From IMG/VR virus record IMGVR_UViG_3300036770_006893, positions 1-64,000 of that record: 64,000 nucleotides of DNA, one strand, 5' to 3'. Positions 18,056-43,023 of the stretch are shown in pieces. Positions within the stretch are counted from its first letter, which is position 1, and the number at the start of each line of letters is the position of its first letter. A program made the position numbers and the translations under genes. The notes below the pieces were generated by a model. The model did no database searches, was not told where the DNA came from, and saw nothing but the letters and a program-made list of their open reading frames with translations.

Positions 18056-18401
18056 AAATAGTCCTTCTTAGTATAGTATGTGGTTTATCATAAAATGACA
18101 AGGTGTTAAAAACAGACTGACTGCGACCATCTCGACGATCAGATTATATTAGCTGGGACAATCTAAATTCTTATATTCTAATTTAGGGATATGTGAAACA
18201 TCATCATATGATATTTCTTTTATAGATATTGTTAATATCAATTCTTTATGCTCGTTGCTATGCTTGACTATTTCTCTTTGGATTAAGGAGCATATATAGT
18301 CACAAGTTATGTTTTGGCCGGCTAATTTTATTGCTATCATTTTTTTTTGGTGTATTAGAAATAAGTCTACAAACATCATCCTTTTTACGGAGAACTTAAT
18401 C

Positions 18402-18719
18402 ATGGCCTATACTGTTAATCCAACAGGAGTTTTTGGTACTGGTATCACTGTTAATGGTGCTGGTATTACTATTCCTTATTCGGCTCTAGAAAGTTATTCT
18501 TCTGCGACATCTGGTGACGTAAGAGAACTAGTCTATTCTTTCTTAGAAAAACTTGCCGACGTTGTTGTTAATCTACCAACTACTGGAACTAATGCTCGCT
18601 GGGGCAAAGTTTCTGTGAGTAGAGGCGTAAGCGTTATCAATGATGAAACACTACGCAAAACATATTCTGTCGGTATTGATCTCAATATTCAGTCTCTTGA
18701 TGTTGTAGATGAAGCCTGA
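18402..18719 (+). CDS. Isolated plus-strand gene, possibly late or structural
   Basis: GGAGA RBS before MAYTVNPTG (the track start at 18309 is probably too early); own GGTGTA motif upstream and terminator downstream. Confidence 0.65.
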   Translation: MAYTVNPTGVFGTGITVNGAGITIPYSALESYSSATSGDVRELVYSFLEKLADVVVNLPTTGTNARWGKVSVSRGVSVINDETLRKTYSVGIDLNIQSLDVVDEA

Positions 18720-18747
18720 TTCTTGTTAATAAAATAACAAGCAAATA

Positions 18748-18785
18748 AAGCTAGGGAGCTGTTGAGGCTCCCTGCTTTTTTTTAT
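18748..18785 (+). terminator. Intrinsic terminator
   Basis: GGGAGC-loop-GCTCCC stem followed by a T run. Confidence 0.75.
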
Positions 18786-18910
18786 ACATCCATTAGTTAT
18801 AATAAGCAGATGGCCAGAATTGTAAAGTTGATTATATTTTTTGCGAATATGCGAATATCATACGGTACGAAAAACTGACTGACTACCACCAATTAACCGA
18901 TCCTATTACA

Positions 18911-19468
18911 TTAGGTGAGACTAGCCTCTATATTAGTATCTACTACTACTAGTTTATAGTTATAGTTTAGTAAAATATTTTTAGTTTTTTCAAAATTTGA
19001 ACCAATATTAAATGCTCCATCAGAATGAACAAACTCAAAAAATATATATGGAACCACATGTTTCGTAAAATCAATGGAGCCAACGATAACAGAATCTAAA
19101 CCTTCAGCGTCTATATATAGTCTATCTGGTTTATATTTTGATAATAAATCATTAATATTAATAGCTGGAACTGATATAGTTTCAATATTTTGATGATGAT
19201 GTTTGATTAGATGATCAAATACTAAAGATGAATGAGCATCATAACTTTGATCTTTTGGGGCATATAGGTTGACAAACTTGCTATCGTCCACTACAATCGC
19301 ATTGTGTAAAAAGGTGCAGTTTGGTACGTTAGCGTAGGTTTCTTTGCATTTGTTAAGTGCTCCTATATTAGCATCAATTAAAATAATATTATCAATATTT
19401 GGATTTGATTTTATATAACTAAATACATGATCATTACCGTCATTGCATCCGATTTGTACTATATTCAT
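18911..19468 (-). CDS. FkbM-family SAM-dependent methyltransferase
   Basis: IVQIGCNDG, IDAN, LYIDAEGLD, FFE motifs. Confidence 0.8.
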   Translation of the reverse strand: MNIVQIGCNDGNDHVFSYIKSNPNIDNIILIDANIGALNKCKETYANVPNCTFLHNAIVVDDSKFVNLYAPKDQSYDAHSSLVFDHLIKHHHQNIETISVPAININDLLSKYKPDRLYIDAEGLDSVIVGSIDFTKHVVPYIFFEFVHSDGAFNIGSNFEKTKNILLNYNYKLVVVDTNIEASLT

Positions 19469-19551
19469 AATTTATACTATTTTTGTTTTGCTTTTTAGTA
19501 TTAAAATAGTCGAAGAGCACATGCTCCACCATGCAAAATATTTGGTTGAAA

Positions 19552-19624
19552 AGCAGCAGAAGGGAATCGAACCCTCAACATTCAGGATGGAAACCTGACA
19601 CTCTGCCAATTGAGTTACTGCTGC
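19552..19624 (-). tRNA. tRNA-Gly(TCC)
   Basis: Cloverleaf: GCAGCAG/CTGCTGC acceptor, TCAGG-TT TCC AT-CCTGA, TTCGATT T-loop. Confidence 0.92.
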
Positions 19625-19933
19625 GTTGTTAAGCCTGACTATCAATATTATTGTTTTGGTTATTAGGCTCTTTATGAACCAAAGGAATTATATCTCCATC
19701 ATGAGCACTTTTCCAAGCAAGCATCCTTCTTTCATCATCCACAATAAATCTCAGAGTACCATCCTTGTGATAAAATGCCCACGCTACTGGTTTTTGATCG
19801 TTACTCATTTTATATGTTCCTTAAATTTGACTGACTACCACCAACAAACCGATCCGATAGGATTAGAAGAAACAAACATATCCCCAGGCTTTTGACCTGA
19901 GGAATATTGTTTGTTCATTGTGTAGGAATATTA

Positions 19934-21546: not shown

Positions 21547-21971
21547 CTATAGCAAATCCGGTCAAATCTTCACTGAGACTATCAATAGCAAAATCTGCCT
21601 CCTGACTATTAACATCACTAATCTCAGGAAAATCAAAAACTACATAAACTTTCATAAGACCCTCTATTTTCGCTGACTATCAACAAGACCAGCAATCAGG
21701 CAGCATCAGGTGGGACACATAAATGATAATAGAATAATCAAAATATTTTCTACTATCTCTTTCATCTAATCTCATCCTCTAATATTTCTCCTAAACCCTT
21801 GCTGGTAAACGACTTACGACTCCATTGTATCGTCTAGAGGCTGGAGTAGCAAGCAACCTTTTTGAGATTCTTTGACAAAGTTTCGATCCTTGCCATTTTG
21901 ACAGGTGCCGCGTGAGATCTGCCATTTTGGCAGTGGTTGCGCCCTGCCTGCCATTTTGACAGGCGAGGTCA

Positions 21972-22011
21972 GGGCCGCCGTAGGTTATTCCCTCGTTCCC
22001 TACGGCGACCC
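21972..22011 (-). terminator. Long GC hairpin downstream of the DUF932 gene
   Basis: GGGCCGCCGTAGG ... CCTACGGCGACCC stem. Confidence 0.55.
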
Positions 22012-22038
22012 ATCACTCACCACGCCACGAAAGGAAGA

Positions 22039-22983
22039 CTAGATCGCGTTGGCAAACTCTAGGGCAGATTCCAACGCCTTATTATTCTCATTAGCATTCT
22101 GGCCGAACCAGAGGCTATCGAGCCGATTGTCGGTCGTGCGACCCTTACCATAGTTCAGATATTCATTGAACCCGTTATAAGCGGCCCACCAAGTACCGCG
22201 AACATTAGTCGCAGTTTGCTTCGGGCCTTCGATACGAGCAAGAATATCGTCCATAATATTACGGGTACGAGTTTTAATATCTTCGTCAGCACCCTTAATA
22301 TTCAGCACAACCTTAACATACTTCTCAATATCCTTCTGGTTGAAACTCTTACTAGCGAGGAACCGATACTGCTCCGCAGTAGCCTCAAATCCAGCATTAA
22401 TATTGTCCATAATATCACGCACTTGTTCCAGATTCTTCTGGCTGGAGCGAGTGTGACGAATACGGATCAACTTGCTATCATTATGCTTGTGAGCATATGA
22501 GAGAGTATTGACACAAACAACACGAATCGGCGTATAGCCTACGCGAATAGCAGTAGTACCGTCGTGACTATTACTCAGCAGGATAAACTTGCTAACCTCA
22601 TCACCCGGAACAATCTCAGCGTTGTCTCGGTTGAGTTGAGCCAGCACCCAAACCTTCTGACCGCTATGCAGCGATCCGGCAGTATGAATAGCACACTCAT
22701 TAGCATCAAGAAACGGCTGGAACCAATCGAACGCATCACGATTCTGAAGGGGCGTATAGCGAGGCCCGACAACGCCAAGAATGCTACCATCGCTCTTGCG
22801 ATATGTTGCACGATGGTTTACGGGCGTACCATCAACGGTCTGCAAATCCTTCAGACCTACTTCCCAATCCAGACCAGCAGCGACGATAGCATCGTTTACG
22901 TTGATACCCTCGTCAACACTATTGCCAAGGCCATGCCAAGGCGTCTCACCAACAAACATCATCTTTTCAACAGCAGCAGGCAT
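22039..22983 (-). CDS. DUF932 family protein (TIGR03299-like)
   Basis: MPAAVEKMMFVGETPWHGLG...TAGSL..G..VWVLA...LLSNSHDGT...RVVCVNTL; GGAG RBS supports a start at 22983. Confidence 0.88.
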   Translation of the reverse strand: MPAAVEKMMFVGETPWHGLGNSVDEGINVNDAIVAAGLDWEVGLKDLQTVDGTPVNHRATYRKSDGSILGVVGPRYTPLQNRDAFDWFQPFLDANECAIHTAGSLHSGQKVWVLAQLNRDNAEIVPGDEVSKFILLSNSHDGTTAIRVGYTPIRVVCVNTLSYAHKHNDSKLIRIRHTRSSQKNLEQVRDIMDNINAGFEATAEQYRFLASKSFNQKDIEKYVKVVLNIKGADEDIKTRTRNIMDDILARIEGPKQTATNVRGTWWAAYNGFNEYLNYGKGRTTDNRLDSLWFGQNANENNKALESALEFANAI

Positions 22984-23125
22984 CTTAATCTCCTTCGTGT
23001 GGGTTAACTTCTTTCGTTCCGATACGCTGATTCTACAATATGTATTCGGCTTGTCAACCCCAGGAAATGAAGAAAATTTTTCTGCCATTTTGGCAGGCGG
23101 GCCGCGGATGCTGCCATTATGGCAG

Positions 23126-23602
23126 TCATCTAATATTTAGAAGAGGAACCCCAAGATCACGCTTACATAGACGAGAACCATCCTCATTATCTTTATATGC
23201 ACATTCATTAGGCAAGTAGCAATATACGCCCTGGCAAACGCTACGAGCATATTCTTCTTTTATAACCTTTTTAATATGCCTTACGGTTGAACCAGAACAG
23301 ATTAAATCGTCTAATATAATATATCGAAAAGGGGCCACTCCCTCGGTACGAAACTCTGAATAGCATCGTTCCCCCTTTCTTACCACAACAATATTCTTGT
23401 TGAGCAACTCTGCGATTTGTGGAACTACCATCAATCCACTTACACCGCAGCAGGCGATACTATCGAAAGTATTCTCTATTTTCCTAAGATTACAAACAGC
23501 ACTAATAATAATCTTATTTCTAGCCTTATGATTCAAAACGTGACAAGTGTGGCTAGCACCCTGAATATATTTACCTTCGGCTGTTTTTCTAATGTCTTCC
23601 AT
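23126..23602 (-). CDS. Type I phosphoribosyltransferase-like protein
   Basis: PRPP-binding motif IILDDLICSGST; probable start at MEDIRK. Confidence 0.8.
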   Translation of the reverse strand: MEDIRKTAEGKYIQGASHTCHVLNHKARNKIIISAVCNLRKIENTFDSIACCGVSGLMVVPQIAELLNKNIVVVRKGERCYSEFRTEGVAPFRYIILDDLICSGSTVRHIKKVIKEEYARSVCQGVYCYLPNECAYKDNEDGSRLCKRDLGVPLLNIR

Positions 23603-23614
23603 AGGAGAGTCAAA

Positions 23615-23706
23615 GATGGACGGCACGATTCGAACGTACTAAAGAAAGGAAAGATAAAGCGGTATGCTTATTTATAGAATACTTGTCCCACCAAGTTGCG
23701 TCCATC
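23615..23706 (-). ncRNA. tRNA-like element (8-bp acceptor, intact T-arm, no canonical anticodon arm)
   Basis: GATGGACG/CGTCCATC stem; GTACG-TTCGAAT-CGTGC T-arm; ACTTG/CAAGT D-like stem. Confidence 0.5.
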
Positions 23707-23722
23707 AGAGGAGAAAGGCTAT

Positions 23723-23896
23723 TTATTCGTTATCTAGTTCATCAACCACATTATGGTAGTAATGCTCATATTCTCTTTCGTCCTCAAGATTATCATAATC
23801 ATCATAATCTGGTTCGTCAGAGTAGTTAGCATAATCATACAGTTCATCAGCATCTTCAACTACACGATCATAATCAAACTCATATTCATCATACAT
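23723..23896 (-). CDS. 57-aa extremely acidic D/E/Y-rich protein (below the ORF-track cutoff)
   Basis: AGGAG RBS; MYDEYEFDYDRVVEDADELYDYANYSDEPDYDDYDNLEDEREYEHYYHNVVDELDNE; 25 of 57 residues are D/E. Confidence 0.75.
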   Translation of the reverse strand: MYDEYEFDYDRVVEDADELYDYANYSDEPDYDDYDNLEDEREYEHYYHNVVDELDNE

Positions 23897-23948
23897 AGCC
23901 GTTTTCTCCTTTCGATCCTATCTTACACCAAACTAACGAACCGTCAAG

Positions 23949-24020
23949 TAGGCCCGCAGGGACATGCACCCCGTTCCATAGATTAAAAGTCTATTGCATC
24001 ACTACTAATGCTTCGAGCCC
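23949..24020 (-). tRNA. tRNA-Lys(TTT), atypical T-loop
   Basis: ATAGA-CT TTT AA-TCTAT anticodon arm; GGGCTCG/CGGGCCT acceptor; T-loop TGCATGT. Confidence 0.8.
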
Positions 24021-24031
24021 AAATCGGCCAA

Positions 24032-24403
24032 TCACCACCAACTATCGTAATATACTTTGTTGCCGTTGTCAAGAGCGGATCTAGCCTCTTGAATAAACTG
24101 TAAATCTTTTTCTCTATAATAGTCGTCGCTATTATCGCCAAAGAAAAATCCAGCAGTTTGTGGCATACGATTATTTGTGATATCTTTTTCTAGAGATTCT
24201 AAATCCTCATAAGATAGTTCCACAGGAACACAGTTGAAATCGCTAAGTCCCATAGAATCAGGCTCTGCGTTTTCATTCGGACGACCCTTGCTCTCCCACA
24301 GATTCTCCATCCACCCCTGAAGATTAGGGTGCTTTCTCCAATAGGCAATCTCATTCTTATTGCCTTCAGAATCAATACTATAAGCAAACTGATCCAAACC
24401 CAT
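24032..24403 (-). CDS. Conserved hypothetical phage protein
   Basis: MGLDQFAY...WRKHPNLQGWME...Y.SWW pattern; own promoter at 24423-24450. Confidence 0.7.
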   Translation of the reverse strand: MGLDQFAYSIDSEGNKNEIAYWRKHPNLQGWMENLWESKGRPNENAEPDSMGLSDFNCVPVELSYEDLESLEKDITNNRMPQTAGFFFGDNSDDYYREKDLQFIQEARSALDNGNKVYYDSWW

Positions 24404-24514
24404 CTCTTTCTCCTTTAGTAGGAGTATACCGTTTGTTATCGACTTGTCAAGAGTAAAAACTTTAACTTTTCGCTGACTATCGCCAAGACCGCAAATCCGT
24501 AGGATTAGGTAGTA

Positions 24515-24601
24515 CGGAATCTGAGGGATTCGAACCCCCGGAGGATTTTAACCCTCGGCGGTTTAGTAAACCGCTGCCTTAAACCGCTCGGCCAAGATTC
24601 C
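24515..24601 (-). tRNA. tRNA-Ser(ACT)
   Basis: GCGGT-TT ACT AA-ACCGC, long variable arm, G73, TTCGAAT T-loop. Confidence 0.88.
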
Positions 24602-24670
24602 AAAAGCGGATTTTTGTTAGGCTCAGAACCCGCTAAACTGGCATCGTAACTCAGACCGTCAGCCTCCGAA

Positions 24671-24755
24671 CACCAGAGATAGGACTCGAACCTATAGTGT
24701 CTATAAATGACGGAGGATTAACAATCCTCTGCGTTTACCATTCCGCCACTCTGGT
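24671..24755 (-). tRNA. tRNA-Asn(GTT) with a long variable arm
   Basis: GAGGA-TT GTT AA-TCCTC; ACCAGAG/CTCTGGT acceptor; G73; variable arm GTC-ATTTATA-GAC. Confidence 0.8.
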
Positions 24756-25383
24756 ATATTTTTATAATTTCTTTTCTATTTGTTGGTATATTGTATGATT
24801 TTGCCCATTTTCTTAATGCATTATCTGTTACTCCAAAACTTTTGGCTGCCTTTGTCCAGTTATTTTTTATCAAGATATTTATAAGTTGTTGTTTTGTTGG
24901 TCTATTAGTTATTTTTCTTAAACTTTTTTTAGAACAAGAACTAGAACAATAATATTTATTATTAGTTTCTTTTTTACATATCTTACATTGTTGTTTTGTT
25001 TTTACTCTCTTTTTTGTAGTTATATCTTTAAACTCGCTAAGAGCATCGTGAGTTTCTCTATGACAGTTAGCACAAAGTAATAAACATTTATCTGCTTCTT
25101 TTTTTAGTATTACTAATGACTTAGTGAGACCTCTTTGACTTAACCCGAATTCTTTTTCTTTAGGGTCTTTATGATGAAAGTCCATCGCCGCAATACATTT
25201 ATTGTATCCACAATTTTCACATTTACCACCTTTGTATTCTACAAGAGCTTTTTTTAAGTCTTTCCTTCTTTTTGTTACATAGTATCTATTTTTACATCTA
25301 TTACAACAAAATTTTCCATTATCTCGTAATGATGCTTCATTAGAACATAAATGCCACAAACATTTCATAGTATAACTCCACAT
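24718..25383 (-). CDS. HNH-type homing endonuclease-like gene inside the tRNA cluster
   Basis: CENCGYNKC..AMDFHH.DP...LLCANCHRE, extra Cys clusters and a C-terminal HTH-like segment; its 3' end overlaps the tRNA-Asn gene; start probably at MKCLW. Confidence 0.8.
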   Translation of the reverse strand: MWSYTMKCLWHLCSNEASLRDNGKFCCNRCKNRYYVTKRRKDLKKALVEYKGGKCENCGYNKCIAAMDFHHKDPKEKEFGLSQRGLTKSLVILKKEADKCLLLCANCHRETHDALSEFKDITTKKRVKTKQQCKICKKETNNKYYCSSSCSKKSLRKITNRPTKQQLINILIKNNWTKAAKSFGVTDNALRKWAKSYNIPTNRKEIIKIYQSGGMVNAEDC

Positions 25384-25433
25384 GTTATACTATAATACGC
25401 CAAGGTTCGAATTTTCAAAGATCTTTTTACTAA

Positions 25434-25505
25434 TTCCGGAGTCTGGGTACGATCCAGAAATAAACGGTCCAAAGCCGTTTGTGATACCAGTTTCACCACT
25501 CCGGA
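25434..25505 (-). tRNA. tRNA-Gln(TTG)
   Basis: AACGG-CT TTG GA-CCGTT; TCCGGAG/CTCCGGA acceptor; T-loop ATCGTAC. Confidence 0.85.
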
Positions 25506-25506
25506 G

Positions 25507-25579
25507 AGCCGGTAGTAGGATTTGCACCCACGACATTCAAATTACAAATTTGACACTCTACTAACTGAGTTATACCGGC
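25507..25579 (-). tRNA. tRNA-Thr(TGT)
   Basis: TCAAA-TT TGT AA-TTTGA; GCCGGTA/TACCGGC acceptor; T-loop TGCAAAT. Confidence 0.88.
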
Positions 25580-25580
25580 A

Positions 25581-25654
25581 TGGTCAGGGGCTGGACTTTA
25601 ACCAGCGACCTCCGGCGGATCCTCCGGTGTTCTGTCTACTGAACTACCCAGACC
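25581..25654 (-). pseudogene. Degenerate tRNA-like gene, anticodon undetermined
   Basis: D-arm GTTC/GAAC and T-arm GCTGG-TTAAAGT-CCAGC present; anticodon arm CCGG-AGGATCCG-CCGG is non-canonical. Confidence 0.6.
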
Positions 25655-25864
25655 TCACATATCATACTCTTGTCGCCACTGTTTGTCAATATCATTTCGA
25701 GTACGACGTCTTTTTGGCCGACTATCCATCGTAGTATCACGATACTCTTTATGACCAGTAGATACTTCCCAAGGCTTTTTAACCTTGAGTTTAATATTGT
25801 TGCCGTACTTGCGGCGAGGACGCATATCGTCGTTGTTGGGGAGGGTAATCATACCATTGACCAT
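25655..25864 (-). CDS. Small basic protein, paralog of 35119-35292
   Basis: KPWEVSTGH...DSRPKRRRTR motif. Confidence 0.65.
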   Translation of the reverse strand: MVNGMITLPNNDDMRPRRKYGNNIKLKVKKPWEVSTGHKEYRDTTMDSRPKRRRTRNDIDKQWRQEYDM

Positions 25865-26125
25865 TTTCGTGCTGATAAAAAACCTTGTCTACATTAGGAT
25901 CGTATGCCATTAAGCAATATTGTATCGGATGATTCGTTTTTGTCAACTCCTGTTTTTCCTCTAAAGCAGGAAGTTTAATCTCACCCTTTTGATAATCCTT
26001 TACACCATTATATGCGAATCCTAAAATAGCAATAATAACCCCTATCCATTGCAGCATAACTGTTCTCCTTGCTGATTGTTTTTGCTCGTCCATGAGCATA
26101 ATATCGGCGGCTGGACTGAAAAACT

Positions 26126-26710
26126 TTAGTCATGATCAGAATATCTGCCTGCACACTTATCACAAAAGCATTCGAAATCTTCCGCTCCATCCCAACATAC
26201 TTCTGGAAATCGCTCGTCTGCTTCTAGACTTTCAGCACCAAAGTCAATCGCTACAAGAATCTTCTTTTTATCACGCTTGACATATCCTAGGTTATATTCA
26301 TGGGCATCACGATAATAAATGCCATTATCCTCCATATCTCCGATCAGATCATTAATCTTTTCGTAGTTAGAACACCAATCACAGTTAGCACAATCTCCGT
26401 CGCAATCTATTGATTTACAACTATATGGACTAGCAATCTCTGTAAGATAACCCCAGTTACTTAGAACCATTTTTTCTTTTGACCTATACCCACCACGACC
26501 GTCAGACTCTGCGAAATAGTTCGGAATCCTAATGCGACACACTGGACTCAAAACCTTTGGAGCCATCATCGGAGATAAATGACTTTGTACAGCATGGGCG
26601 AAAGTAGCCAAACTTTTATTAGGAAAACCCTTAAATCCATAAGATTGATTTTTAACCTTATAGAAAGTATTCTGGCTACCACTATCAACATATTTTCCAA
26701 CGTATGCCAT
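26126..26710 (-). CDS. Protein kinase-like / phosphotransferase fold protein
   Basis: G-loop-like VDSGSQNTFY, Lys in YGFK, catalytic loop YRDAHEYN, DFG. Confidence 0.7.
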   Translation of the reverse strand: MAYVGKYVDSGSQNTFYKVKNQSYGFKGFPNKSLATFAHAVQSHLSPMMAPKVLSPVCRIRIPNYFAESDGRGGYRSKEKMVLSNWGYLTEIASPYSCKSIDCDGDCANCDWCSNYEKINDLIGDMEDNGIYYRDAHEYNLGYVKRDKKKILVAIDFGAESLEADERFPEVCWDGAEDFECFCDKCAGRYSDHD

Positions 26711-28779: not shown

Positions 28780-28780
28780 A

Positions 28781-30289: not shown

Positions 30290-31554
30290 GCTTCTAGTAT
30301 ACCTTATCGACCAACTCTTGTCAAGACCTTTAAACTTTCGCTGACTACAGCCACCCCAGCCAAATCCGAAGGATTAGGAAAAACAATGTCGGCTTCCGCC
30401 ATACTCGACCAGCATTTCAGATAGCCTCTTTTGATATCATTGTGGCTATCCCCGTCCATTGTTTCCTTAAGTATACCATTAGTATCGGCACTGTCAATAC
30501 CAATCTATAAGAAAAATATTCTGCCATTTTGGCAGTTGCGCCGCGGCTCCTGCCGTTTTGGCAGCTAGGAGTTTTTATGCACTAGATCAATATACTTTTC
30601 TACTAGTTCGTAGGTATCAATCTGGTGAATGTTTATTAATTCTTTAGCCTTAGTAATGGATGCTTTATTCATGGCATTCATACGAGAGTTAAAGAAGTTG
30701 ATGATATAAACCATAGCCTGATCCTTAGTCATATTTTTAGGATCAGTACCGAGCAAGTCGCTAAAGTTTTTAGCCATTATTATTCCTCATGAAATCCCCA
30801 ACGGCCACTATCGCCCCAAACCTCTCTACTTTTAGGATAATCGTCAGGATAATCTCTTGCAGAACCGTCAGCATTAACCGGCCTACGTGGCCTAGTCATT
30901 TCAGGATTGTATGGCATCCACCACGGAGTATCCATACGATCTACAACCCCCAAAGATTCTTTACAATAGATGATATGATGGCTCACCGGATCGTCAGGAG
31001 AATACTTATACTGACCAAACCACACACCAATATACTTACCATAATAGTAGATAAGTTGTCCATCTTCTGGTTGACGATCAAAAAAACTAATCCATTCCAT
31101 TACCAACCCTCCGGCATAGGAATATCACCAAGATACATATAATATGCAACTTCATTAGCATCAAGAGTTTCCCAACCGCTATTGTGATAACCCCAAGAGG
31201 AACCATCCCAATATAGTTCACTAGGCTTGTTATTGCCAATAATAGCACAGAGATAATAGCCTATATCAATAGGTTGTCCACTTCGCCATTCCATTATTTA
31301 CCCCTCGTAATAATCACACACTTTGTACCCTTATCCTCATCAGTATACCTAAGACACTCATGAGACCCATAATACCAAACATCATTCTTAGAAAAGTTGA
31401 ATATAATCTCTTCCGTATGAAGTTGAGTATCATCATACCCACCCTCATAACCCAGAGTCAATACCCTCATATCCCCAGGATAATCCTTCAACTGCTCAAT
31501 CAGTTCGTTAACTGTCATGTTTGCATTCTACCCTATAGTTATCGTCATGTCAAT

Positions 31555-33302: not shown

Positions 33303-33477
33303 CTCTTTACTCCTTAGAACCGTACCAGATATATCGGCATTTTATCAGCCGTTCGCCACTTGTCAATAAAAACTTTGACAAAATATAACTGTCATTTTGG
33401 CAGATTGGGCGCAAAAACTGTCATTTTGGCTGACAACACCCATGCCGCCCGAATCCGAAGGATTAGCAGGAACAGAA

Positions 33478-33550
33478 TAGCGCCACGGAGGATCGAACTC
33501 CGATCTCCGGGATGAAAGCCCGGTATACTAAACCATTATACTATGGCGCC
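33478..33550 (-). tRNA. tRNA-Glu(TTC)
   Basis: CCGGG-CT TTC AT-CCCGG; GGCGCCA/TGGCGCT acceptor; TTCGATC T-loop. Confidence 0.9.
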
Positions 33551-34234: not shown

Positions 34235-34299
34235 ATCAAACCCTTTCGTTTATAAATCCTTCACTCAATAAAACTAGCATACCACAAGAAAAAACTTTG

Positions 34300-34635: not shown

Positions 34636-35118
34636 TGTAGTTTCCTTTGGGGTGATGCTCTAAGGATACCATATAGATCGGCACTGTCAAGCAAGAACTT
34701 GAAAAATATTTTTGCTGCCATTTTGGCAGGCCGGGCGCCACACCTGTCATTTTGGCAGATAGGTTATTTCCTGACCGTTTTCGATCATCGCAGCGTAAAT
34801 AGATATACGCTTATCCTTCTCACGCTTCTCAATCTGGTGGTCAGTTTCAACGCTGTCACGAGAATCACACTTGCGTTCCAGATCGGCCAGCGACACACTA
34901 TCGGTACGATTGTCGCGGAAATCTTCAGGCAGCCAGTGATTCGGAACCACAATCACATCCTTGATAACTCGCTCAAACTCAGCAATCAGTTCATATCCGT
35001 TCATCTTTTTTCTCCTGTGATGAATAGATTATACAGCCGTTATTGTGCTTGTCAACAAAAGAAAATCATTTTTTGCTGACTACAGCCACTCTAGCCAAAT
35101 CCGTAGGATTAGGTAAGA

Positions 35119-35292
35119 CTAGTCGTAGTCTCTTATGGCCCTACGCTTTTGATCGCCGCGAGTGCGACCACGTTTGGGGCGATTGTCGTGAGAACCGCTA
35201 CCACTAATATGGTTTGCGTGTCCGCGACCAACTTCCCAAATCGGCTTCACGTTGAGCCGAATCGAATCGTACTTTTTATTTCGCTTACCCAT
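35119..35292 (-). CDS. 57-aa basic protein (below the track cutoff)
   Basis: MGKRNKKYDSIRLNVKPIWEVGRGHANHISGSGSHDNRPKRGRTRGDQKRRAIRDYD, directly behind the promoter at 35302-35329. Confidence 0.7.
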   Translation of the reverse strand: MGKRNKKYDSIRLNVKPIWEVGRGHANHISGSGSHDNRPKRGRTRGDQKRRAIRDYD

Positions 35293-35410
35293 GATGCTAT
35301 GATTCTACAATACTATCGGTCAGTGTCAAGAGAAAAATCCACAAAATATTTATATGCCATTTTGGCAGAAATCGCGGCCCCGCTGCCATTTTGGCAGATC
35401 GGGGTTTTAT

Positions 35411-35632
35411 TCAGTAATCATCCCCATAGTGGCCGTAATACTCATCTTCACCCCAACCCGCCGAACCTAATGCGGATTCGTGATCTCCATCCATGCTATC
35501 ATCATAGTCATCGGTGAAGTCGTTATAATCATCATAGTTGACATCATCGGCTTCGTGCGATTCATCATCAATCCACGGCCAAATGGTACGCTCGGCCATC
35601 TCATCGAAACGATCAAAAGAATCCTGGCTCAT
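35411..35632 (-). CDS. Highly acidic small protein
   Basis: MSQDSFDRF...DGDHESALGSAGWGEDEYYG; RBS supports a start at 35632. Confidence 0.7.
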   Translation of the reverse strand: MSQDSFDRFDEMAERTIWPWIDDESHEADDVNYDDYNDFTDDYDDSMDGDHESALGSAGWGEDEYYGHYGDDY

Positions 35633-36255
35633 CTTATTATCCCTTCGGGTGAAAAAGAACAATCAAACCATACACACAGTATAAAGCCACAGCGGCGATT
35701 GTCAATAGGGTGTTCACTGAACATTCCCCCAAAATGGATCGTCCGCTGGAACAAACTCATCCACAATCCCGACTACTTCGGCCCAATCCCAAAAATCGGT
35801 CATGTTCTCCGGATCGTCAATCGGCTCGACCATAGGTTCAATCGTACCCTCGTCGGCCAGTTGATTCAGAATAGCGTTGATCGCGTCCGTATCGTCGAGC
35901 AGAGCCATCATTCGAGGAAACTGGTTCATGGTCATTTCTCCGTTGGGATGATACGCTGATTCTACAATAGAATATCGGCTTGTCAACTAAAAAAATCCAC
36001 AAAAATATCTCTGCCATTTTGGCAGTCCGGCCGCGGAAACTGCCATATTGGCAGCCCCTTGTTCAGTTTATAATGTAGGTAATATAACAACCCACAATAA
36101 AAGAAAAACTCAACAGAATATAATCCGCTTTATTCATCTTTTTCACTTATAGGAAAAATAAACTCACAAATACTATAAACACAAATACCACCAATAACAA
36201 ATCCAGCAAAGAATACTCCCCAGTTTACATATTCGGCCATCCCTAGCCCCTTTCT

Positions 36256-36795
36256 TTAAGAGTTAACTAAAATATTATCTTCAAACTCTGTACCATCCTG
36301 CAAATACCACTGATACTTTTTCTGGTAAACTTTAACAGGAGAATACTTGTTGATCCTATCCTTTGTGGTGCTGGTTCGCCATCCACCACTATTCAACTTA
36401 ACCGTACCATTAGGATAGAACCTCACAACCGCTGTACCATGCAACCGAATAGAGATACTATTATCATATTCGATTTCAGCGTATGTATTATTACCAATCT
36501 TTCGCTCGGTTCGCATAGTCTTACCATAAACCATGCTCAATGCTTCGGCGTAAGTCATTTTATTTTCCTCTGATTACAGAGCCTTGATTTTATTTAGAAT
36601 CTTAGCCACACCATCAAAATCGAGCCAGCCTAAAACATCTGCGGTAATGGGCGTATTATATGTAATCTCTCCATTATTGTCAAGTACCGCAACCTCAAAA
36701 AGTCCGTCGTTTCCACCGTATGTATTAGGGCCAGAAACCACACTTGACCCATAGCCGTTAGGAAACCGATAAATCTTCTGGTATGAATCAAACAT
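36256..36795 (-). CDS. Two conserved hypothetical phage proteins (36574-36795, 36256-36558)
   Basis: YRFPNGYG.SVV...GLFEVAVLD and GGWRTSTTKDRIN motifs; GAGG RBSs. Confidence 0.7.
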
Positions 36796-39464
36796 TTTCT
36801 ACTCCAAAGAAAGCAACCAAACCATACCACCCAATATCCATCCTGTCAATACTAAACTAATAACTTCCATTATTTTATCCAACTTGCCACATAACACCCA
36901 AACCCGAAGCAAGCCATTATAGCAGATAGTTCGCAAACAGTCAATACCATTTTACCCTCGTTTTTCGCTGACTATAGCCCACCTTGCCAATCCGATAGGA
37001 TCGGATGATACAATCACTTGGCGTGAATAAAAACTTTTTTACTAACGGTCTGATTTGTTACAGTAACAATCCAGTTTTTACCGCTACCATCCTCACGCAT
37101 GATACTATTGATAATACCAACGTGAACATTCCCCCTAGGATCAAACACGCTACCATACTTTCCCGTACGCATAGCGGCCATAATCTTATCTAGACTATTC
37201 ATCACGACACCCCCATCCAAGCGGCATTTTCCACACAATAAAGATAGAACATATCGTTCAACACCTCTCGATAGTTAGTATCGGTCAGCAGACGACGGTC
37301 CCGAGTAGACTCACACTCAGCATACAACCCACCGTCAGGAGTTGCAAGTAGAGTGATATTATGGCTCTCGCTGCCCCAAATCTGAGTCAGAGCATCTTTG
37401 ATTTTGTTGATTCCCATTTTCTTTTCCTCGCTGCTAGGTATATCGGTATTCTACAGGGTGAACCTTGAATGTCAAATAAAAAAATCAGAAAAATATTCGG
37501 CTGCCATTTTGGCAGATTTTGCGGCCCGGCTGCCATTTTGGCAGTATCAAAATCCCTTATGATGCTCTACCAGCATATGTAACATAATCTTTTCTGTTAT
37601 CATAACCGTGATACCTATAAGTAGGTTCACACATAAACGCTAATACATCCTTCATTTTATCAAAAGTGTAAGTCGCATGTGTAACTTTACTACGCAGCAC
37701 ATACTTTACAATCTGGCAATCAAAGTGCAGATTATAGTTATCCGCTTCGGCTTTGTTCTCAATATCAACCAATCTGGATCTCATATTATCACTCTACAGA
37801 AAAAGTAACAAGATTATTCACAAGTACGCTCTTAACCAACCTATTATCCTGTTGGATAACAACCATTTCACCCTTATCAGGATCGGTAGAGGGCCAACTC
37901 CAAACGTCGATAATAACACCAGTAAAGATACGGCCATCCTTACGTTGACAAGTAAAATGCTTGTTATAGTGTTCACGCATACTCATATTACTATTCCTTT
38001 CAACCAAACTCTTCATACTCTTCATCACTCAAATACGGCTCATTTGGACGGTAGCAGTTATAACTACCATAATGATCCGCATTAGTTTCATAATCACACT
38101 CTCGACCGCAACGCGAGCAAGTAGGTTCGTAATCAACAATATCAACCCTAACACCGCAACAGTTACTATTCATCTTTCAACCAATCACAAACAACGGAAT
38201 GTAAACAAACAAGTAAGCCCAAAAACCAACCAGAAAACCTACCAGACTCAGACCACTAATCATACCAAAAGTATCGGTATCGTGGCCGAACAGATTGTAA
38301 CAAATCCACTTTTTCATTGTGAATACTTTCCAGCGAGAAATCCGAGACAAAACACGATATTCAGAATCGGTAAAACTAGCACAAAAAATATAAAACCAGC
38401 ACGATACATTTTCTTTCTCTCCTGACTATTCTACCAGACTTTTTCTACTTGTCAACCCCTCAAAGCGGGGGGACTACTCTTGAACTTGAACTTTGATTGA
38501 ATGTGAAGTTCATCCATCACGAACGTGACAGCATCGTAAAGGATTCCACGGAAAACGTAATACTTCATTCGCATATCAAACAGTTTGACCGTACCATCCT
38601 CTTGCGGGTGGACAGTGAAACCAGCATCATAAGCGTAACGATTGAAACGACCAGTGATCGTGGAACGGGCTGGCATTGGCTTGATTTTCATTTTCTTTCT
38701 CTCTTTCTCTACTGACTATTCTACCAGACTTTTCTGCCCCGTAAACCCCCATCATGAGGGGTAGATGGTTTCCAGGGTCTTACGATTTTCGTCGATTCGC
38801 ACGATAGCCAAATCGTACTGGTAAAGGCTAGACTTGGTAGCAGATCGATAGGCTACAGTAGCCTCTTCGAGCGTAGCGTACACGTTGGACTGAACAAAAC
38901 CATCAAAACGCAAAGCAAACATTCTCAACTCTCTTTCTTTCTCTTTCTCTTTCTCTTTATATCGACATTATACCAAGCCCAACTTGAATGTCAAACAAAA
39001 AAATCGGTCGAAAAAAAGTTTTTTGTGGCATGATATTTGCTAGTAGCAAACCGCGTACCAAAAAAGTTTGGCACGATATTTGCTGACGCTGCCATTTTGG
39101 CAGGCCGCGCGCGATTTCTGCCATTTTGGCAGCGTATTCTCGCTGGCTACTGCCATTATGTCAGCCGATAGGATCGGCTGTTACAACCCCCTCTCAGTAG
39201 GGGTGTCCGTATGCGTCCAGCCCCTTAGGGTATCGCTTGTCAAAATCTTCTACCCTGACGCAATAATCGTTCAGTTTCTGGTAGAAAGTATCTGCAGAGC
39301 GAAGCAAAACATTTTCGGGATGATTGTTGATTCGTAAGAAAAATCCACCACCCCCCGATGGAGTGATATCAAACCGTACATCATCATCCATCATTTCATA
39401 GATAGCGTCGATGATTTCCTGAGCCGTAACGATTGAACCGATCATTTTTTGGGTTCCTTTCTTT

Positions 39465-39776
39465 TCAGTGGGTAATAACTTCGCGATTGTATGTATACGT
39501 CCACCACACTTCGCACTCTTCAAGATAGATCGACCGATAGGTGGGGCTAGGGTCGCGAGGATAATACCATTCAATCGTGACCAGCGTACCCTTAGGATAA
39601 GCCGCAACCTTGACGATATTTCCGGCGTAACCCTTCCCGTTATGCTTGACGCACTCGAAACCCTTATTTACGGCAACCGTGCCGAACTTGTCGCAACGCA
39701 TTTCCATTTCCGTTTCCATTTTCATTTCTCCCTTGTGATGATTAGATCCTACATTAGATGTCGGCATTGTCAACAA
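39465..39776 (-). CDS. Small beta-rich protein, paralog of 41434-41688
   Basis: ECVKHNGKGYAGNIVKVAAYPKGTLVTI...YRSIYLEEC; start probably 39725. Confidence 0.7.
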   Translation of the reverse strand: MLTMPTSNVGSNHHKGEMKMETEMEMRCDKFGTVAVNKGFECVKHNGKGYAGNIVKVAAYPKGTLVTIEWYYPRDPSPTYRSIYLEECEVWWTYTYNREVITH

Positions 39777-40215
39777 AAAAAATCACTCGATTTCAACCGA
39801 CGTCCATTCCTGGCAATCTGGGCAAATCACGACGATATCATCGACCGGGTCGCTTGGGCAAGGTACATCAACCGGGCAGCCGCAGCACTGCGAGATATAT
39901 TCAACATCATCAAACATTTTCAATCTCCCTTTTCCTTTTCACTTATCCTACATAGTGTATCGGCATTGTCAAAAAAAAGAAATAGAGAAATCGTTGGTGA
40001 AGTTTTCCCCACAAAAATATTTTCGTTTGGCATGATATTTGCTGGGGGCAGTTTGGCATGAGATTTGCTGTGCCTGCCATTTTGGCAGAAAACGCGGCCC
40101 ATCTGCCGTTTTGGCAGTCATATCTCGCTGGCTACTGCCATTATGTCAGCCGATAGGATCGGCTAGTACAACCCCTCCGAAGAGGGGAGTACCAACCAAC
40201 CCTACCTTTGGGGGG

Positions 40216-40395
40216 TTAGGCAAAATCTTCCTCGCCCTGAAAATCGTCGAGCCACTCATCATCCGTGTCGATCCAATCCTCATCATCTCCCATGATCGGA
40301 TCCCAACCGGTAGCATCCGTCACGAGCCACTCGCGACCATCCTCGTCCGTCATGCTGTCGGCCACAATCCGCTCAAAATCGTGAAGCATTTTCAT
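40216..40395 (-). CDS. 59-aa acidic protein (below the track cutoff)
   Basis: MKMLHDFERIVADSMTDEDGREWLV...WLDDFQGEEDFA; paralog of 41969-42130. Confidence 0.75.
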   Translation of the reverse strand: MKMLHDFERIVADSMTDEDGREWLVTDATGWDPIMGDDEDWIDTDDEWLDDFQGEEDFA

Positions 40396-41433
40396 TTCCT
40401 TTATTATCGGGTCAACAGAACAGCAATCGCCAACGATTTCCGATCATAGCAGCCATAGATGCCGCCGTCAATCAGAATCGTCCAGAATCCGTGTCGAGTT
40501 GGATGCGGGATAACTTTCATGCTCATATTCTACAATATATAATCGTCAAGTCAAATAAAAAAAATGAGAAGAAAAAATATTTTGTTTTGGCACGATATTT
40601 GCTGACGCTGCCATTTTGGCAGGCCGCGGGCGATTTCTGCCATTTTGGCAGTCCCTCCCCCATAATGGGGGAGAACATATGTATACCCTACCGATAGGGG
40701 GTCAATCCCCCAAATAACTTTCCATAAAATCAACATACCAGCACATAAAAGCCTTCCCCGCCTCATGTACGGTATATGAAACAAAAGCCGACACTACGAT
40801 ACAGGCGAACAGTATAGAAAAATCGTTCATTCTCAACCCTCCCAAGCAAACGGAGAAACTTCCTCACCCATAGCGGCGATAGCATCATACTGTGACCGCA
40901 AAGCCTCTACACGCTCCCGACTACCCGGCTTGCCAACCTTGATAATCATCGTATCCTCACCCCCACTATAGCGGGGGTCAACCTTCTCCACCTTCTCGAC
41001 TGCGGTTTCCCGCATAGCCTTACGATTGAACTTCAAAACCTTCTCACTGCGAATCGTGCCGCCATCGGCGGTACTCTTGTCGCAAGGGATTGCCAGACCC
41101 ACGAAGCACAGATACGCTTGACGCTTGGCGTTTTCAATAATCGGAAACATTTTGGATACCCTTAGTGGTGAAGTGAAAAACTTATTTGCAGGAAACAACA
41201 ACGAACCCGACAGGATTGCATACGCTCAACTTGTCGGCATCAACTTGGGCAGACTCCCGACTATTATATACCTTGCCGGGTTCGACACCAGCACAAGCAC
41301 ACGTTTCGGGCTGACTGTAGGCGTTGAGGGGTGTGGCCCCTTCATACGCTCGCGAACTTTTCATAATGATGAACATGACCACTTTCCTTCTGACTTGATC
41401 CTACCAAACTTTTCCAGACTATTCAACCCCCTC

Positions 41434-41688
41434 TCAATAGGGGGCTGGCTCGCCAGCATACCAGACCTTGCAATCTTCAAGGTAGATCGACCGATGCGAC
41501 ATCGGCATTTCACCGACACTATACATCCGACCATCATTTTCCAGAGGCTCGGCGTATGCAATCGTGACCAGCGTACCGCGAGGATATGCGGCAACCTTGA
41601 CGATATGGCCAGCGTAATGCTTGCCGTTCAACTTCTCACACTCAAAATCGAAACCAACTTGAACCGTTCCGAACTTGCTCATCTTCAA
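41434..41688 (-). CDS. Small beta-rich protein, paralog of 39465-39776
   Basis: ECEKLNGKHYAGHIVKVAAYPRGTLVTI...HRSIYLEDC. Confidence 0.7.
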   Translation of the reverse strand: MKMSKFGTVQVGFDFECEKLNGKHYAGHIVKVAAYPRGTLVTIAYAEPLENDGRMYSVGEMPMSHRSIYLEDCKVWYAGEPAPY

Positions 41689-41968
41689 CTCTCCTGTGGT
41701 GATGCTTTGATTCTACATTAGGTATCGGCATTTGCAAGAAAAAAAAATAGTCGAAAAAAAAGATTTTTTGGCACAAGATTTGCTGTTGCCATATTGGCAG
41801 AGCGTTTGGCACAAGATTTGCTGTAACTGCCATTTTGGCAGATTTCGCGCGATTTCTGCCATTTTGGCAGGTTGCCTCTTCTGCCGTTTTGGCAGTCGCT
41901 AACCGCCCGGTTTGGGTGGTACAATCCCCCATTGGGGGGATAGTTTGGTTTCCCTACCTTTGGGGGAG

Positions 41969-42130
41969 TTATGCGAACTCCTCTTCCCCGTAAACGTCCC
42001 AGTCTGCATCTTCTTCGTAGTCGATATATTCTTCCTCGTCGTCCCAATCTACCCCAGCATATCCAACCAGCCAATCTTTCCCATCTTCGCAAGTCATGCT
42101 ATCCGCGATAATCCTTTCAAACTCGCTCAT
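41969..42130 (-). CDS. 53-aa acidic protein (below the track cutoff)
   Basis: MSEFERIIADSMTCEDGKDWLV...DWDVYGEEEFA. Confidence 0.75.
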   Translation of the reverse strand: MSEFERIIADSMTCEDGKDWLVGYAGVDWDDEEEYIDYEEDADWDVYGEEEFA

Positions 42131-42399
42131 TTGGCATCCTCCGTTTGGGGGGTATTCTTCTTGGCCTGATCCTTACGCCATTGTTCCACAAACTTTACAT
42201 AATCGTCAACTTCACCGTAACGGTTATCCTTCTGGTAATCGTAACCGTCATCCGAACCGATGGGACGATAGGAAGAACGGTAGGAACGATAGTCGGAAGC
42301 GTAACGGCTAAACCTTTTCATCTTTTTCTCTCTTTCTTTCTCTCTTACTCTTATATCGGGATTCTACAATAGGATTCTTGAATGTCAACTAAAAAAAAA

Positions 42400-42639
42400 T
42401 CACGGAAGATACATATCGTTCACAACGTATCCGATTTCGTCGATTTCGATATATCCGCCATCGTCACAGAATCCGATTTCATCGTTGATTTCGATGCCAT
42501 TATCATTCTCACGAACACGGGCGAGCAGGTCGCCAGCGAAAGCCACGCGATTTACCAGTGTATCCAACGTGTTGTGATTCAGAAACTCGGTCAACTCGGC
42601 CACAGTATTCAGAACGATCAGGTTAGCAAACATTTTCAA
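42400..42639 (-). CDS. Hypothetical acidic protein, first gene of the leftward region
   Basis: Directly downstream of the promoter at 42660-42687. Confidence 0.7.
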   Translation of the reverse strand: MKMFANLIVLNTVAELTEFLNHNTLDTLVNRVAFAGDLLARVRENDNGIEINDEIGFCDDGGYIEIDEIGYVVNDMYLP

Positions 42640-43023
42640 CTCTCGCTTTCTTTCTCTCGATTATACAATAGAGTATCGGAATGTCAACAAAAAAAAATCA
42701 CAAAAAATCTCACTGGCGAAAACTTCACCGCCTCAGGTTTGGCACGAGATTTGCTACAGAGTTTCCCCACCTATGGGGGGTTTTTTCATTTTCCCTCTGA
42801 TGGGGGGTTTATCCCCCAAAAACCGCGGGTGGTCTAAACACAATAACCCCACCACAACCATTAAGTATCACCTAATCCTACAAGATGCAACCATAAGATT
42901 ATGTGTAGATTACAATATTATTGTGCGCAGACTCTAGAAGCTGATGTTACAGATTGTTAGATAAGCTATTATGGTTTTATTTTTTTTGTTACTATGGTGT
43001 ATTCCATATCAAGGAGAAATTTT

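What the first reader, a model, noticed from the sequence alone, without database searches (positions are those of the whole stretch)
18116..42881. Second bipartite motif (CTGACTA ... AATCC-GWA-GGATT) at other cassette junctions
Seen: five full copies, with 21-23 nt (two helical turns) from CTGACTA to ATCCG at 19831, 24473, 30341, 35076 and 36968, plus partial copies. At 24.47, 30.34 and 35.07 kb it occupies the upstream-of--35 position that Box A holds elsewhere. At 21.67 and 36.96 kb it lies between cistrons with no evident promoter. An inverted half sits at the strand switch (42871). Inference: a second regulator defining another promoter class, or an RNA processing/antitermination signal.
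Basis: partly seen in the sequence, partly recalled or inferred. Interest (0 to 1): 0.6.

Follow-up and report, generated by a model that had tools for sequence, protein, structure and literature searches.

The report
Conserved junction element between phage gene cassettes
The motif is real: a roughly 53-base non-coding element that marks the boundaries between small early-gene and tRNA units in a clade of uncultured 200-240 kb phages. It is the seam where those units are swapped between genomes, not a signal for a second promoter class, and it carries an unexplained pair of co-varying direct repeats.

Summary
Confirmed, but it must be read on the minus (coding) strand. The element runs GT-N5-CCTAA, a small inverted repeat (AATCC-TWC-GGATT), two 9-nt units each starting TGGab, then TAGTCAG-CGARAA.

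**Copies in this genome.** The 224-kb genome has six strong copies, two degenerate and three weak or variant ones. All lie on one strand between 18.1 and 40.2 kb. Block shuffles of the window gave none.

**Conservation.** The element occurs in more than 119 IMG/VR stretches and 7 MAG contigs. Five complete relatives (terminase 79-82% identical) carry 4-9 copies each, on one strand, in the same region.

**Context.**
- It follows ORFs, often supplying their stop codon, or follows tRNAs.
- It precedes whatever comes next: a sigma-70 promoter at a variable 9-42 nt (46%), an RBS plus start codon, a tRNA, or another copy.
- Between genomes, homology breaks at the element in 83% of pairs that share one flank.

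**Interpretation.** It is a unit-boundary and cassette-exchange seam, analogous to T4-type PeSLs, and not an operator for a second promoter class. RNA structure is weak.

**Unexplained.** The spacing is fixed (no one-unit form in all of IMG/VR), and the two units co-vary by identity rather than complementarity.

The parts
30333..30387 (-). Full copy of the junction element (best match, 74 bits). It lies inside a 51-codon ORF (30304-30459) that reads through it. A promoter starts 16 nt downstream.
35068..35122 (-). Full copy. The upstream ORF (35119-35292) stops at a TAG inside the element's 5' part. A consensus promoter starts 20 nt downstream.
24465..24518 (-). Full copy (14-nt spacer class) that starts at the 3' end of tRNA-Ser (24514-24602). 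A promoter starts 22 nt downstream.
33422..33476 (-). Full copy with TTGTCAG. It starts 1 nt after tRNA-Glu (33477-33551). Its tail overlaps the first of two Box A palindromes (33418-33431, 33389-33402), which are followed by a promoter.
36960..37014 (-). Full copy with a shifted hairpin (TCCGAT-CCT-ATCGGA). The promoter TTGACT-17-TATAAT starts 23 nt downstream.
19823..19876 (-). Full copy with a 4-nt loop, followed directly by the start codon of ORF 19629-19808, with no promoter between.
21665..21719 (-). Degenerate copy (29 bits). The hairpin is lost, but the 3' half is kept and is followed by an RBS plus ATG.
18871..18924 (-). Degenerate copy (27 bits) with an altered hairpin.
39135..39187 (-). 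Variant copy (19 bits). It has a 7-bp hairpin (AGCCGAT-CCT-ATCGGCT), TAGCCAG in place of TAGTCAG, and a core that resembles Box A. Two Box A palindromes follow.
40120..40172 (-). Second variant copy of the same kind (18 bits).
18109..18162 (-). Weak candidate copy (14.5 bits, E about 0.2-0.7).
42865..42881 (+). The 5' half of the element alone, on the opposite strand, at the point where transcription diverges. It is likely a recombination remnant cut in the loop.

Best explanation
Motif B is a non-coding unit-boundary ('punctuation') element of the early-gene and tRNA region of this phage clade, and it is the seam at which expression units are exchanged between genomes.

**Anatomy on the coding strand.** GT-N5-CCTAA comes first and often holds the upstream ORF's stop codon. 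Next is a small inverted repeat, AATCC-TWC-GGATT. Then come two 9-nt units that both begin TG(G/C)ab, then TAGTCAG, then an A-rich tail.

**Shown.**
- The element sits at the 3' end of an ORF or tRNA, so it is always transcribed as that unit's 3' UTR or trailer.
- It precedes any kind of next unit.
- It is confined to one strand and one 15-20 kb region, with 4-9 copies per genome, in a clade of 200-240 kb phages.
- Homology between genomes usually ends at it.

**Inferred.**
- The shared ~50 nt serve as portable homology for general recombination. The genome encodes a RecA/UvsX-like protein and no site-specific recombinase was found. Units are inserted, deleted and replaced in this way, as proposed for PeSLs of T4-type phages.
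- The invariant blocks at a fixed distance are held by a sequence-specific factor that reads the sense strand. The most likely form is the RNA of the upstream unit, marking or processing its 3' end. This is more likely than a promoter operator.

**Not explained.** Why the two units must carry the same variable bases.
For: - **Real and clustered.** Six full copies against 0 in shuffles, none elsewhere in 224 kb, all on the minus strand.
- **Conserved.** A model search found 221 matches in 847 kb of these loci. Five complete relatives with terminase 79-82% identical have 4-9 copies each, on one strand, 10-30 kb from the terminase gene.
- **Boundary position.** 28 of 58 upstream ORFs stop inside the element, at its TAA or TAG. 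39 of 216 copies start within 12 nt of a tRNA 3' end. Downstream lies a promoter in 84 of 184, an RBS plus start in 37, and other units in 63.
- **Seam.** Of 206 pairs of copies that share one flank, 172 are unrelated on the other flank. Contigs of relatives from DNA and RNA libraries break homology at 35070, 35112, 35115 and 30379, joining other cassettes there. A half element lies at 42865-42881.
- **Recombination machinery.** A RecA-like gene is present; no tyrosine or serine recombinase or Y1 transposase was found.
- **Specific recognition.** Spacing is 15 nt in 150 copies and 14 nt in 31. All of IMG/VR holds 0 one-unit forms and only 2 longer forms.
- **Sense-strand reading.** Strict co-orientation with genes, and 25 G-U against 6 A-C cells in the stem.
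Against: - No experiment or RNA end maps to the element. Only assembled contigs were available, and contigs break at repeats anyway.
- The hairpin is weak: alifold gives 4 bp at -1.5 kcal/mol, and most copies fold no better than shuffles.
- Stem covariation is not significant: 12 double-sided cells against 7.4 +/- 2.3, reached by 25 of 500 shuffles.
- Many degenerate copies lose the hairpin.
- Seams at a repeat would arise whatever the repeat's primary function is, so the seam does not reveal that function.
- Plain homologous recombination does not need a fixed-length variable core or identity between the two units.
- The RecA-like gene is only circumstantial.
Confidence: 0.5

Rival explanations
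1. It is a site-specific recombination or nicking site, an analogue of an integron attC or of a hairpin-plus-cleavage-site recognised by an HUH enzyme. Conserved arms bind the enzyme, and the variable core with its two identical pentamers is where strands are cut or exchanged and defines compatibility types.
For: - Conserved blocks flank a variable core of strictly fixed length.
- The core falls into discrete types, with 11 identical-triplet types.
- The core changes in both units together at the same junction in 7 of 11 changed pairs.
- Elements sit at cassette 3' ends and overlap stop codons, as attC sites do.
- Copies occur in tandem with only 8-10 nt between them.
Against: - No tyrosine or serine recombinase or Y1 transposase was detected in the complete genome.
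- The core is only weakly linked to either flank, and crossovers appear on both sides of it.
- The arms are not symmetric around the core.
- No circular or excised forms were observed.
Confidence: 0.15
2. It is a DNA operator for a second transcription regulator that defines another class of early promoters.
For: - At 24.47, 30.34, 35.07 and 36.97 kb it lies 16-23 nt upstream of -35.
- In relatives the commonest gap is 16 nt, in 33 of 84 copies.
- The inverted repeat could bind a dimer.
Against: - 54% of copies have no promoter behind them.
- The gap to -35 ranges from 9 to 42 nt.
- Copies precede tRNAs and start codons directly.
- When Box A is present, the element lies upstream of it.
- Core promoters behind the element and behind Box A are the same family.
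- Stem variants such as AACCC/GGGTT occur alongside the canonical stem in one contig, which a single dimeric reader would not tolerate.
Confidence: 0.1
3. It is a processive antitermination or regulatory RNA site of the nut/put kind, in which a hairpin plus a linear box loads a factor onto RNA polymerase.
For: - Bipartite layout of a hairpin plus a conserved linear sequence at a fixed distance.
- Strand-specific.
- It lies upstream of terminator-like Box A hairpins at 33.4, 39.1 and 40.1 kb, and upstream of a long hairpin with a T-run in relatives.
Against: - It sits at the end of units, upstream of the next promoter, not in the leader behind a promoter.
- There are 4-9 sites per genome, each behind a different short unit.
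- It shows no similarity to boxA or boxB and matches no Rfam family.
- The hairpin is weak and often lost.
Confidence: 0.08
4. It is a selfish or neutral dispersed repeat (MITE- or REP-like) with no role for the phage. It would be kept similar only by spread and gene conversion.
For: - Copy presence varies between orthologous junctions.
- Degenerate AT-rich copies and tandem arrays exist.
Against: - It has no terminal inverted repeats or target-site duplications.
- Invariant blocks and exact spacing persist across genomes whose flanking genes are only about 70% identical.
- It is restricted to one strand and one region in every genome.
- No transposase was found.
Confidence: 0.1

Closest known systems
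PeSL elements (promoter-early stem-loop) of T4-type phages (Arbiol et al. 2010, PMC2839356; Comeau et al. 2014, PMC4122927)
   Same: - A repeated intergenic motif with a stem-loop just upstream of sigma-70-like early promoters.
- Concentrated in a hyperplastic region of small ORFs and tRNAs of a large lytic phage.
- Found at the edges of insertions, deletions and replacements between related genomes.
- Half copies occur.
   Different: - PeSLs are composites of a terminator-like stem-loop with the promoter itself. Here the promoter is optional and at a variable distance.
- Here the stem is weak and has no T-run.
- The element carries extra invariant blocks (TAGTCAG) at a fixed spacing and a co-varying direct repeat.
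- The phage is not T4-like: its terminase is at most about 29% identical to isolates.
- In this window it is Box A plus its T-run that looks like a classical PeSL.
Integron attC sites
   Same: - They lie at the 3' end of each gene cassette and often overlap the stop codon.
- They are strand-specific.
- Sequence is conserved only in blocks around an imperfect inverted repeat.
- They mark where cassettes are exchanged.
   Different: - No integron integrase or any tyrosine recombinase was found.
- No R''/L''-L'/R' symmetric architecture and no GTTRRRY core.
- Many cassettes here carry their own promoter.
- The inverted repeat is only 5-7 bp.
REP/BIME elements and their RAYT transposases; IS200/IS605 ends
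   Same: - Short intergenic elements in 3' UTRs with a small hairpin and a conserved tetranucleotide-like block nearby (GTAG occurs within many copies).
- Read on one strand.
   Different: - No Y1/RAYT gene was found.
- No covariation between the hairpin foot and a distal cleavage site. The covariation seen is identity between two direct repeats.
Lambda nut / rrn antitermination sites
   Same: A small hairpin plus a conserved linear box, acting on one strand.
   Different: - Wrong position: unit end, not leader.
- No sequence similarity.
- Many copies per genome.
- No N-like or Q-like evidence.

Membership tests
PeSL (T4-type promoter-early stem-loop) | Stem-loop immediately upstream of a sigma-70-like early promoter, forming one composite unit | tested here: not met
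   A promoter follows only 84 of 184 copies, and the gap is 9-42 nt. In the window, 4 of 8 clear copies have a promoter 16-23 nt away.
PeSL (T4-type promoter-early stem-loop) | Located in hyperplastic regions and at the edges of indels or replacements between related phages | tested here: met
   172 of 206 one-flank-homologous pairs differ on the other flank. Contig joints and loose ends fall at element edges. The element is clustered in one region in six complete genomes.
PeSL (T4-type promoter-early stem-loop) | Stem-loop acts as a transcription terminator | tested here: not met
   The stem is 4-5 bp and A-T rich, at -1.5 kcal/mol consensus, with no T-run. True terminator-like hairpins follow the element in several cases. 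Function as such was not assayed.
PeSL (T4-type promoter-early stem-loop) | Mini-circles or deletions between tandem copies are detectable | not testable with these tools
   Only assembled contigs of public runs were available.
Operator of a promoter-class regulator | Fixed position relative to -35/-10, and present only at promoters | tested here: not met
   In contrast, the proximal Box A copy lies a near-fixed distance from -35 (mostly 22-25 nt from the 15-nt core; about 25 nt from the 14-nt match).
Structured RNA family (Rfam) | Match to a curated covariance model, or significant covariation in a consensus structure | tested here: not met
   Only tRNAs reach the gathering score, and nothing relevant appears at E<=10. 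Covariation: 12 cells against 7.4 in shuffles, reached by 25 of 500. z-scores are mostly not significant.
Intrinsic terminator | G+C-rich stem followed by a U-tract | tested here: not met
   No element copy appears in the terminator scan. Box A hairpins with T-runs do.
Integron attC | Partner integron integrase (tyrosine recombinase) in the genome | tested here: not met
   PF00589 finds nothing in the complete genome, while the controls ring.
Integron attC | Site at the 3' end of cassettes, overlapping stop codons, strand-specific | tested here: met
REP/RAYT or IS200/IS605 end | Y1 HUH transposase present; guide-to-cleavage-site covariation next to the hairpin | tested here: not met
   PF01797 is absent. 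Mutual information shows no link between the 5' flank of the hairpin and distal columns.
Protein-coding sequence | An open frame running from an upstream gene through the motif | tested here: not met
   At least 50 open codons upstream in only 2, 0 and 10 of 95 copies for the three frames. Two frames carry conserved stops. Copies follow tRNAs. A few short ORFs do read through, for example 30304-30459.

The most novel reading that the evidence does not exclude
The element is the recognition site of an undescribed sequence-specific machine of large environmental phages. This would be either a cassette recombination system without a known recombinase, or a new RNA signal. In it, two pentamers 9 nt apart must be identical: they co-vary by identity, not complementarity. 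That would imply that both are read by pairing with one and the same nucleic-acid partner, or that they mark a staggered exchange.
Probability: 0.2. Interest if true: 0.85.

Novelty: new variant of a known kind. Interest (0 to 1): 0.55.

Why it matters
Large uncultured phages carry long arrays of tiny early genes whose turnover is fast and poorly understood. This element gives a sequence handle on that turnover. It pinpoints the unit boundaries in more than a hundred contigs and shows where units are swapped. Because it is short and sharply defined, it is directly testable by end-mapping, pull-down, and deletion or core-swap mutants. The identity covariation of two direct repeats at fixed spacing is a kind of constraint that standard RNA-motif or operator models do not predict. 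Explaining it could reveal a new mode of recognition. Practically, the element and Box A together allow automatic segmentation of such hyperplastic regions into cassettes.

Tried and rejected
- **Coding.** No frame is open upstream, and two frames have conserved stops. TAGTCAG is invariant at the nucleotide level, so a short leader peptide starting at the DTG before unit 2 is unlikely.
- **Known RNA families.** None matched.
- **Intrinsic terminator.** Rejected.
- **General tRNA trailer signal.** Only 39 of 460 tRNAs are followed by the element, and the core type does not follow tRNA identity.
- **Slippage-driven homogenisation of the two units.** No one-unit or three-unit forms exist in the loci or in all of IMG/VR.
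- **A complementary partner for the variable core inside the element or its flanks.** None appeared in the mutual-information scan.
- **N4-type hairpin promoter.** No single-subunit or multisubunit phage RNA polymerase was found, although the control for PF00940 was silent, so this is inconclusive.
- **Sigma-54-like -24/-12.** The spacing is wrong by 2 nt (by inspection).
- **T-box-like UGGN pairing with tRNA CCA ends.** 15% of copies have TGC in both units.
- **Chi-like or ops-like reading.** This fits only one core type.
- **Literature search for the motif strings.** Only unrelated primer hits.
- **Similarity to isolated phages.** No nucleotide match, and terminase at most about 29% identical.
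- **RNA evidence.** The two metatranscriptome runs hold relatives' contigs across the region, but contigs cannot show RNA ends or rule out DNA carry-over.
- **Not run.** No protein-complex prediction and no large protein search were run, because the finding is non-coding.


Full report
**Setting.** The window is the first 64 kb of a 224,357-bp virus record rated complete. Bases 1 to about 42.8 kb are transcribed on the minus strand as many small ORFs plus eight tRNA genes. From about 43 kb the plus strand carries terminase, portal and tail genes. The phage has no close isolated relative: there is no nucleotide match, and its terminase is at most about 29% identical to Bacillus phage terminases. 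The segment 22-42 kb has a G+C fraction of 0.40-0.49, against 0.32-0.35 on either side.

**The observation.**
- CTGACTA alone is hardly enriched: 12 matches against 6.7.
- The bipartite pattern occurs six times, against zero in 300 composition-preserving shuffles, and nowhere else in the genome.
- The sixth copy is at 33430-33463 and has TTGTCAG.
- Because the genes run on the minus strand, the element has to be read as its reverse complement. Aligned copies then show a unit of about 53 nt. It consists of GT, five variable bases, CCTAA, the inverted repeat AATCC-TWC-GGATT, T, two 9-nt units that each begin TG(G/C) plus two variable bases, TAGTCAG, and CGARAA.
- A covariance model built from 106 copies finds six strong, two degenerate and three weak or variant copies in the genome. 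All are on the minus strand between 18.1 and 40.2 kb.
- A 5' half element lies on the plus strand at 42865-42881, where the two transcription directions diverge.

**Conservation.**
Most have the same 34-nt span from ATCC to TCAG.
- Seven MAG contigs also hold the element.
- The model finds 221 matches in 847 kb of these loci.
- Five complete contigs of 200-238 kb have terminases 79-82% identical to the window's. Each has 4-9 copies, all on one strand, within 15-20 kb, and 10-30 kb from the terminase gene on the opposite strand.
- Between the window and two of these genomes, the surrounding genes are only about 68-78% identical at the DNA level and form a mosaic. An orthologous pair of elements keeps all invariant blocks while differing in the variable columns.

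**What it is not.**
- It is not coding. Two frames carry conserved stops, the third is rarely open upstream, and copies follow tRNAs. A few short ORFs read through it, for example 30304-30459.
- It matches no Rfam family.
- As RNA it is weakly structured. RNAalifold keeps only a 4-bp stem at -1.5 kcal/mol. Most window copies fold no better than shuffles.
- Non-canonical copies keep hairpin potential only in part: 21 of 59 have z below -1.
- Some stems change on both sides (AACCC/GGGTT, AACC/GGTT, CCGAT/ATCGG), but the counts are not significant: 12 double-sided cells against 7.4 +/- 2.3.
- G-U cells outnumber A-C cells 25 to 6. This is a modest hint that the sense strand is the one being read.
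- It is not an intrinsic terminator.

**Context.**
- The element begins at or just after the end of the upstream unit. In 28 of 58 cases with a clear upstream ORF, the stop codon is the element's own TAA or TAG. In 39 of 216 cases the element starts within 12 nt of a tRNA 3' end, but only 39 of 460 tRNAs are followed by it.
- Downstream lie a sigma-70-like promoter in 84 of 184 copies (gap 9-42 nt, mode 16), an RBS plus start codon in 37, and other things in 63: a tRNA, another copy, or a long hairpin with a T-run.
- The window holds 37 near-consensus promoters on this strand between 17 and 43 kb. Those behind the element and those behind Box A share the same core, including a CCGATA motif in the spacer.
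- Box A (CTGCCAAAATGGCAG) occurs in about 20 pairs 29 bp apart. Its proximal copy lies a near-fixed distance from -35 (mostly 22-25 nt from the 15-nt core, about 25 nt from the 14-nt match) and often carries a T-run, so it looks like a terminator-promoter composite.
- Where both occur, the element lies upstream of Box A.
- Box A is present in only 26 of 119 relatives' loci, so the element is the more widespread of the two.
- Together these facts argue against an operator that defines a second promoter class.

**Seam of cassette exchange.**
- Among pairs of copies from different contigs that share one flank (at least 75% identity over 40 nt), 119 share only the upstream flank, 53 share only the downstream flank, and 34 share both.
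- The 5' variable bases travel with the upstream flank and the tail travels with the downstream flank. The core is only weakly linked to either, and the loop base is linked to neither. This suggests crossovers on both sides of the core.
- Contigs from public runs laid on 30200-36200 show relatives in which other units are joined exactly at element edges:
  - a DNA-run joint from 32557 to 35070;
  - loose ends at 35112 that continue into the gene end which precedes the 30.34-kb copy in the window;
  - a loose end at 35115 that continues into tRNA-Ser;
  - a joint from 30379 to 33555.
- The genome encodes a RecA/UvsX-like protein. No tyrosine or serine recombinase or Y1 transposase was detected.
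- This is the behaviour described for PeSLs in T4-type phages, although the anatomy differs.

**The unexplained part.**
- The distance from the inverted repeat to TAGTCAG is 15 nt in 150 copies and 14 nt in 31.
- In all of IMG/VR there is no copy with one unit, and only two with a longer gap.
- Within this fixed spacer, the strongest covariation in the whole element is identity between the two units at an offset of 9 nt. Observed against expected identity is 0.95/0.70 at position 3, 0.85/0.28 at position 4, and 0.66/0.32 at position 5. There is no excess at positions 6-9. There are 11 different identical triplets.
- At junctions where both flanks are homologous, position 4 differed in 11 pairs. 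In 7 of these, both units had changed together and stayed identical.
- The base before the second TGG is never C (0 of 149).
- No complementary partner was found. Unit-number slippage is excluded, and coding does not explain the pattern.
- I regard this as evidence that the element is read by something sequence-specific with strict geometry. What reads it remains open.

**Verdict.** The motif is real, strand-specific, and conserved in a clade of large uncultured phages. It is best described as a unit-boundary element and cassette seam. It works like a PeSL but is not a member by anatomy. The promoter-class reading is not supported. An RNA-level role at the 3' end of units is the most likely primary function but is unproven.

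Noticed in passing
window 21890-41894, minus strand: Box A (CTGCCAAAATGGCAG) occurs in about 20 pairs with exact 29-bp spacing. The promoter-proximal copy lies a near-fixed distance upstream of -35 (mostly 22-25 nt from the 15-nt core, about 25 nt from the 14-nt match) and is often followed by a T-run, so it scores as an intrinsic terminator. This gives a PeSL-like terminator-promoter composite. It is present in only 26 of 119 relatives' loci.
   Followed up: partly
window 17262-42687, minus strand: There are 37 near-consensus sigma-70 promoters (TTGACA, 16-17 nt, TAnnnT) in 26 kb. Many have a conserved CCGATA motif in the spacer and TAGAAT as the -10 hexamer. This may be a shared regulatory feature of the early promoters.
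   Followed up: partly
window 39135-39187 and 40120-40172: Two variant copies have a core (TGACATAATGGCAG) that resembles a Box A palindrome, and TAGCCAG in place of TAGTCAG. They link the two motif families. The element's tail CAGC(C/G)AAAA also resembles the left half of Box A.
   Followed up: partly
window 30304-30459, minus strand: A 51-codon ORF with its own promoter and RBS reads through the 30.34-kb copy in the one open frame and stops inside the next promoter's spacer. Its 3' part (GAGTATGGC...) is conserved at the nucleotide level upstream of the element in many relatives.
   Followed up: partly
L030:166-265 and the same sequence in L011, L017, L053, L055, L057, L064: In several relatives the element is followed by a conserved stretch of about 70 nt that folds into a long hairpin with a T-run (-24.7 kcal/mol for 100 nt) before the next promoter. 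It could be a terminator or a small RNA. It is absent from the window's genome.
   Followed up: partly
window 38422-38428 and 38712-38718: Two CTGACTA hits are not copies of the element. They belong to another repeat in which TAGAAT (a -10 hexamer) is followed by AGTCAG and a purine-rich GAGAGAAAG leader. Similar purine-rich leaders occur at promoters between 38.4 and 42.7 kb.
   Followed up: no
window 23949-24020, minus strand: An eighth tRNA is found by Rfam (42 bits) but not by ARAGORN. ARAGORN also reports tRNA-Ser with anticodon ACT at 24514-24602, which is unusual.
   Followed up: no
window 45398-46018, plus strand: This ORF has a sub-threshold match to sigma-70 region 2 (19.5 bits) just upstream of the structural genes. 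It may be a phage sigma factor for late transcription. No phage RNA polymerase was detected.
   Followed up: no
window 22000-42000: The cassette region has a G+C fraction of 0.40-0.49, clearly above the 0.32-0.35 of both flanks. One small protein here (36256-36558) matches the Kyanoviridae Gp96 family.
   Followed up: no
L026:2263-2502, L099:7583-7698, L092:1687-2084: In relatives, degenerate AT-rich copies of the element form tandem arrays with only 8-250 nt between them, sometimes with no ORF between.
   Followed up: partly
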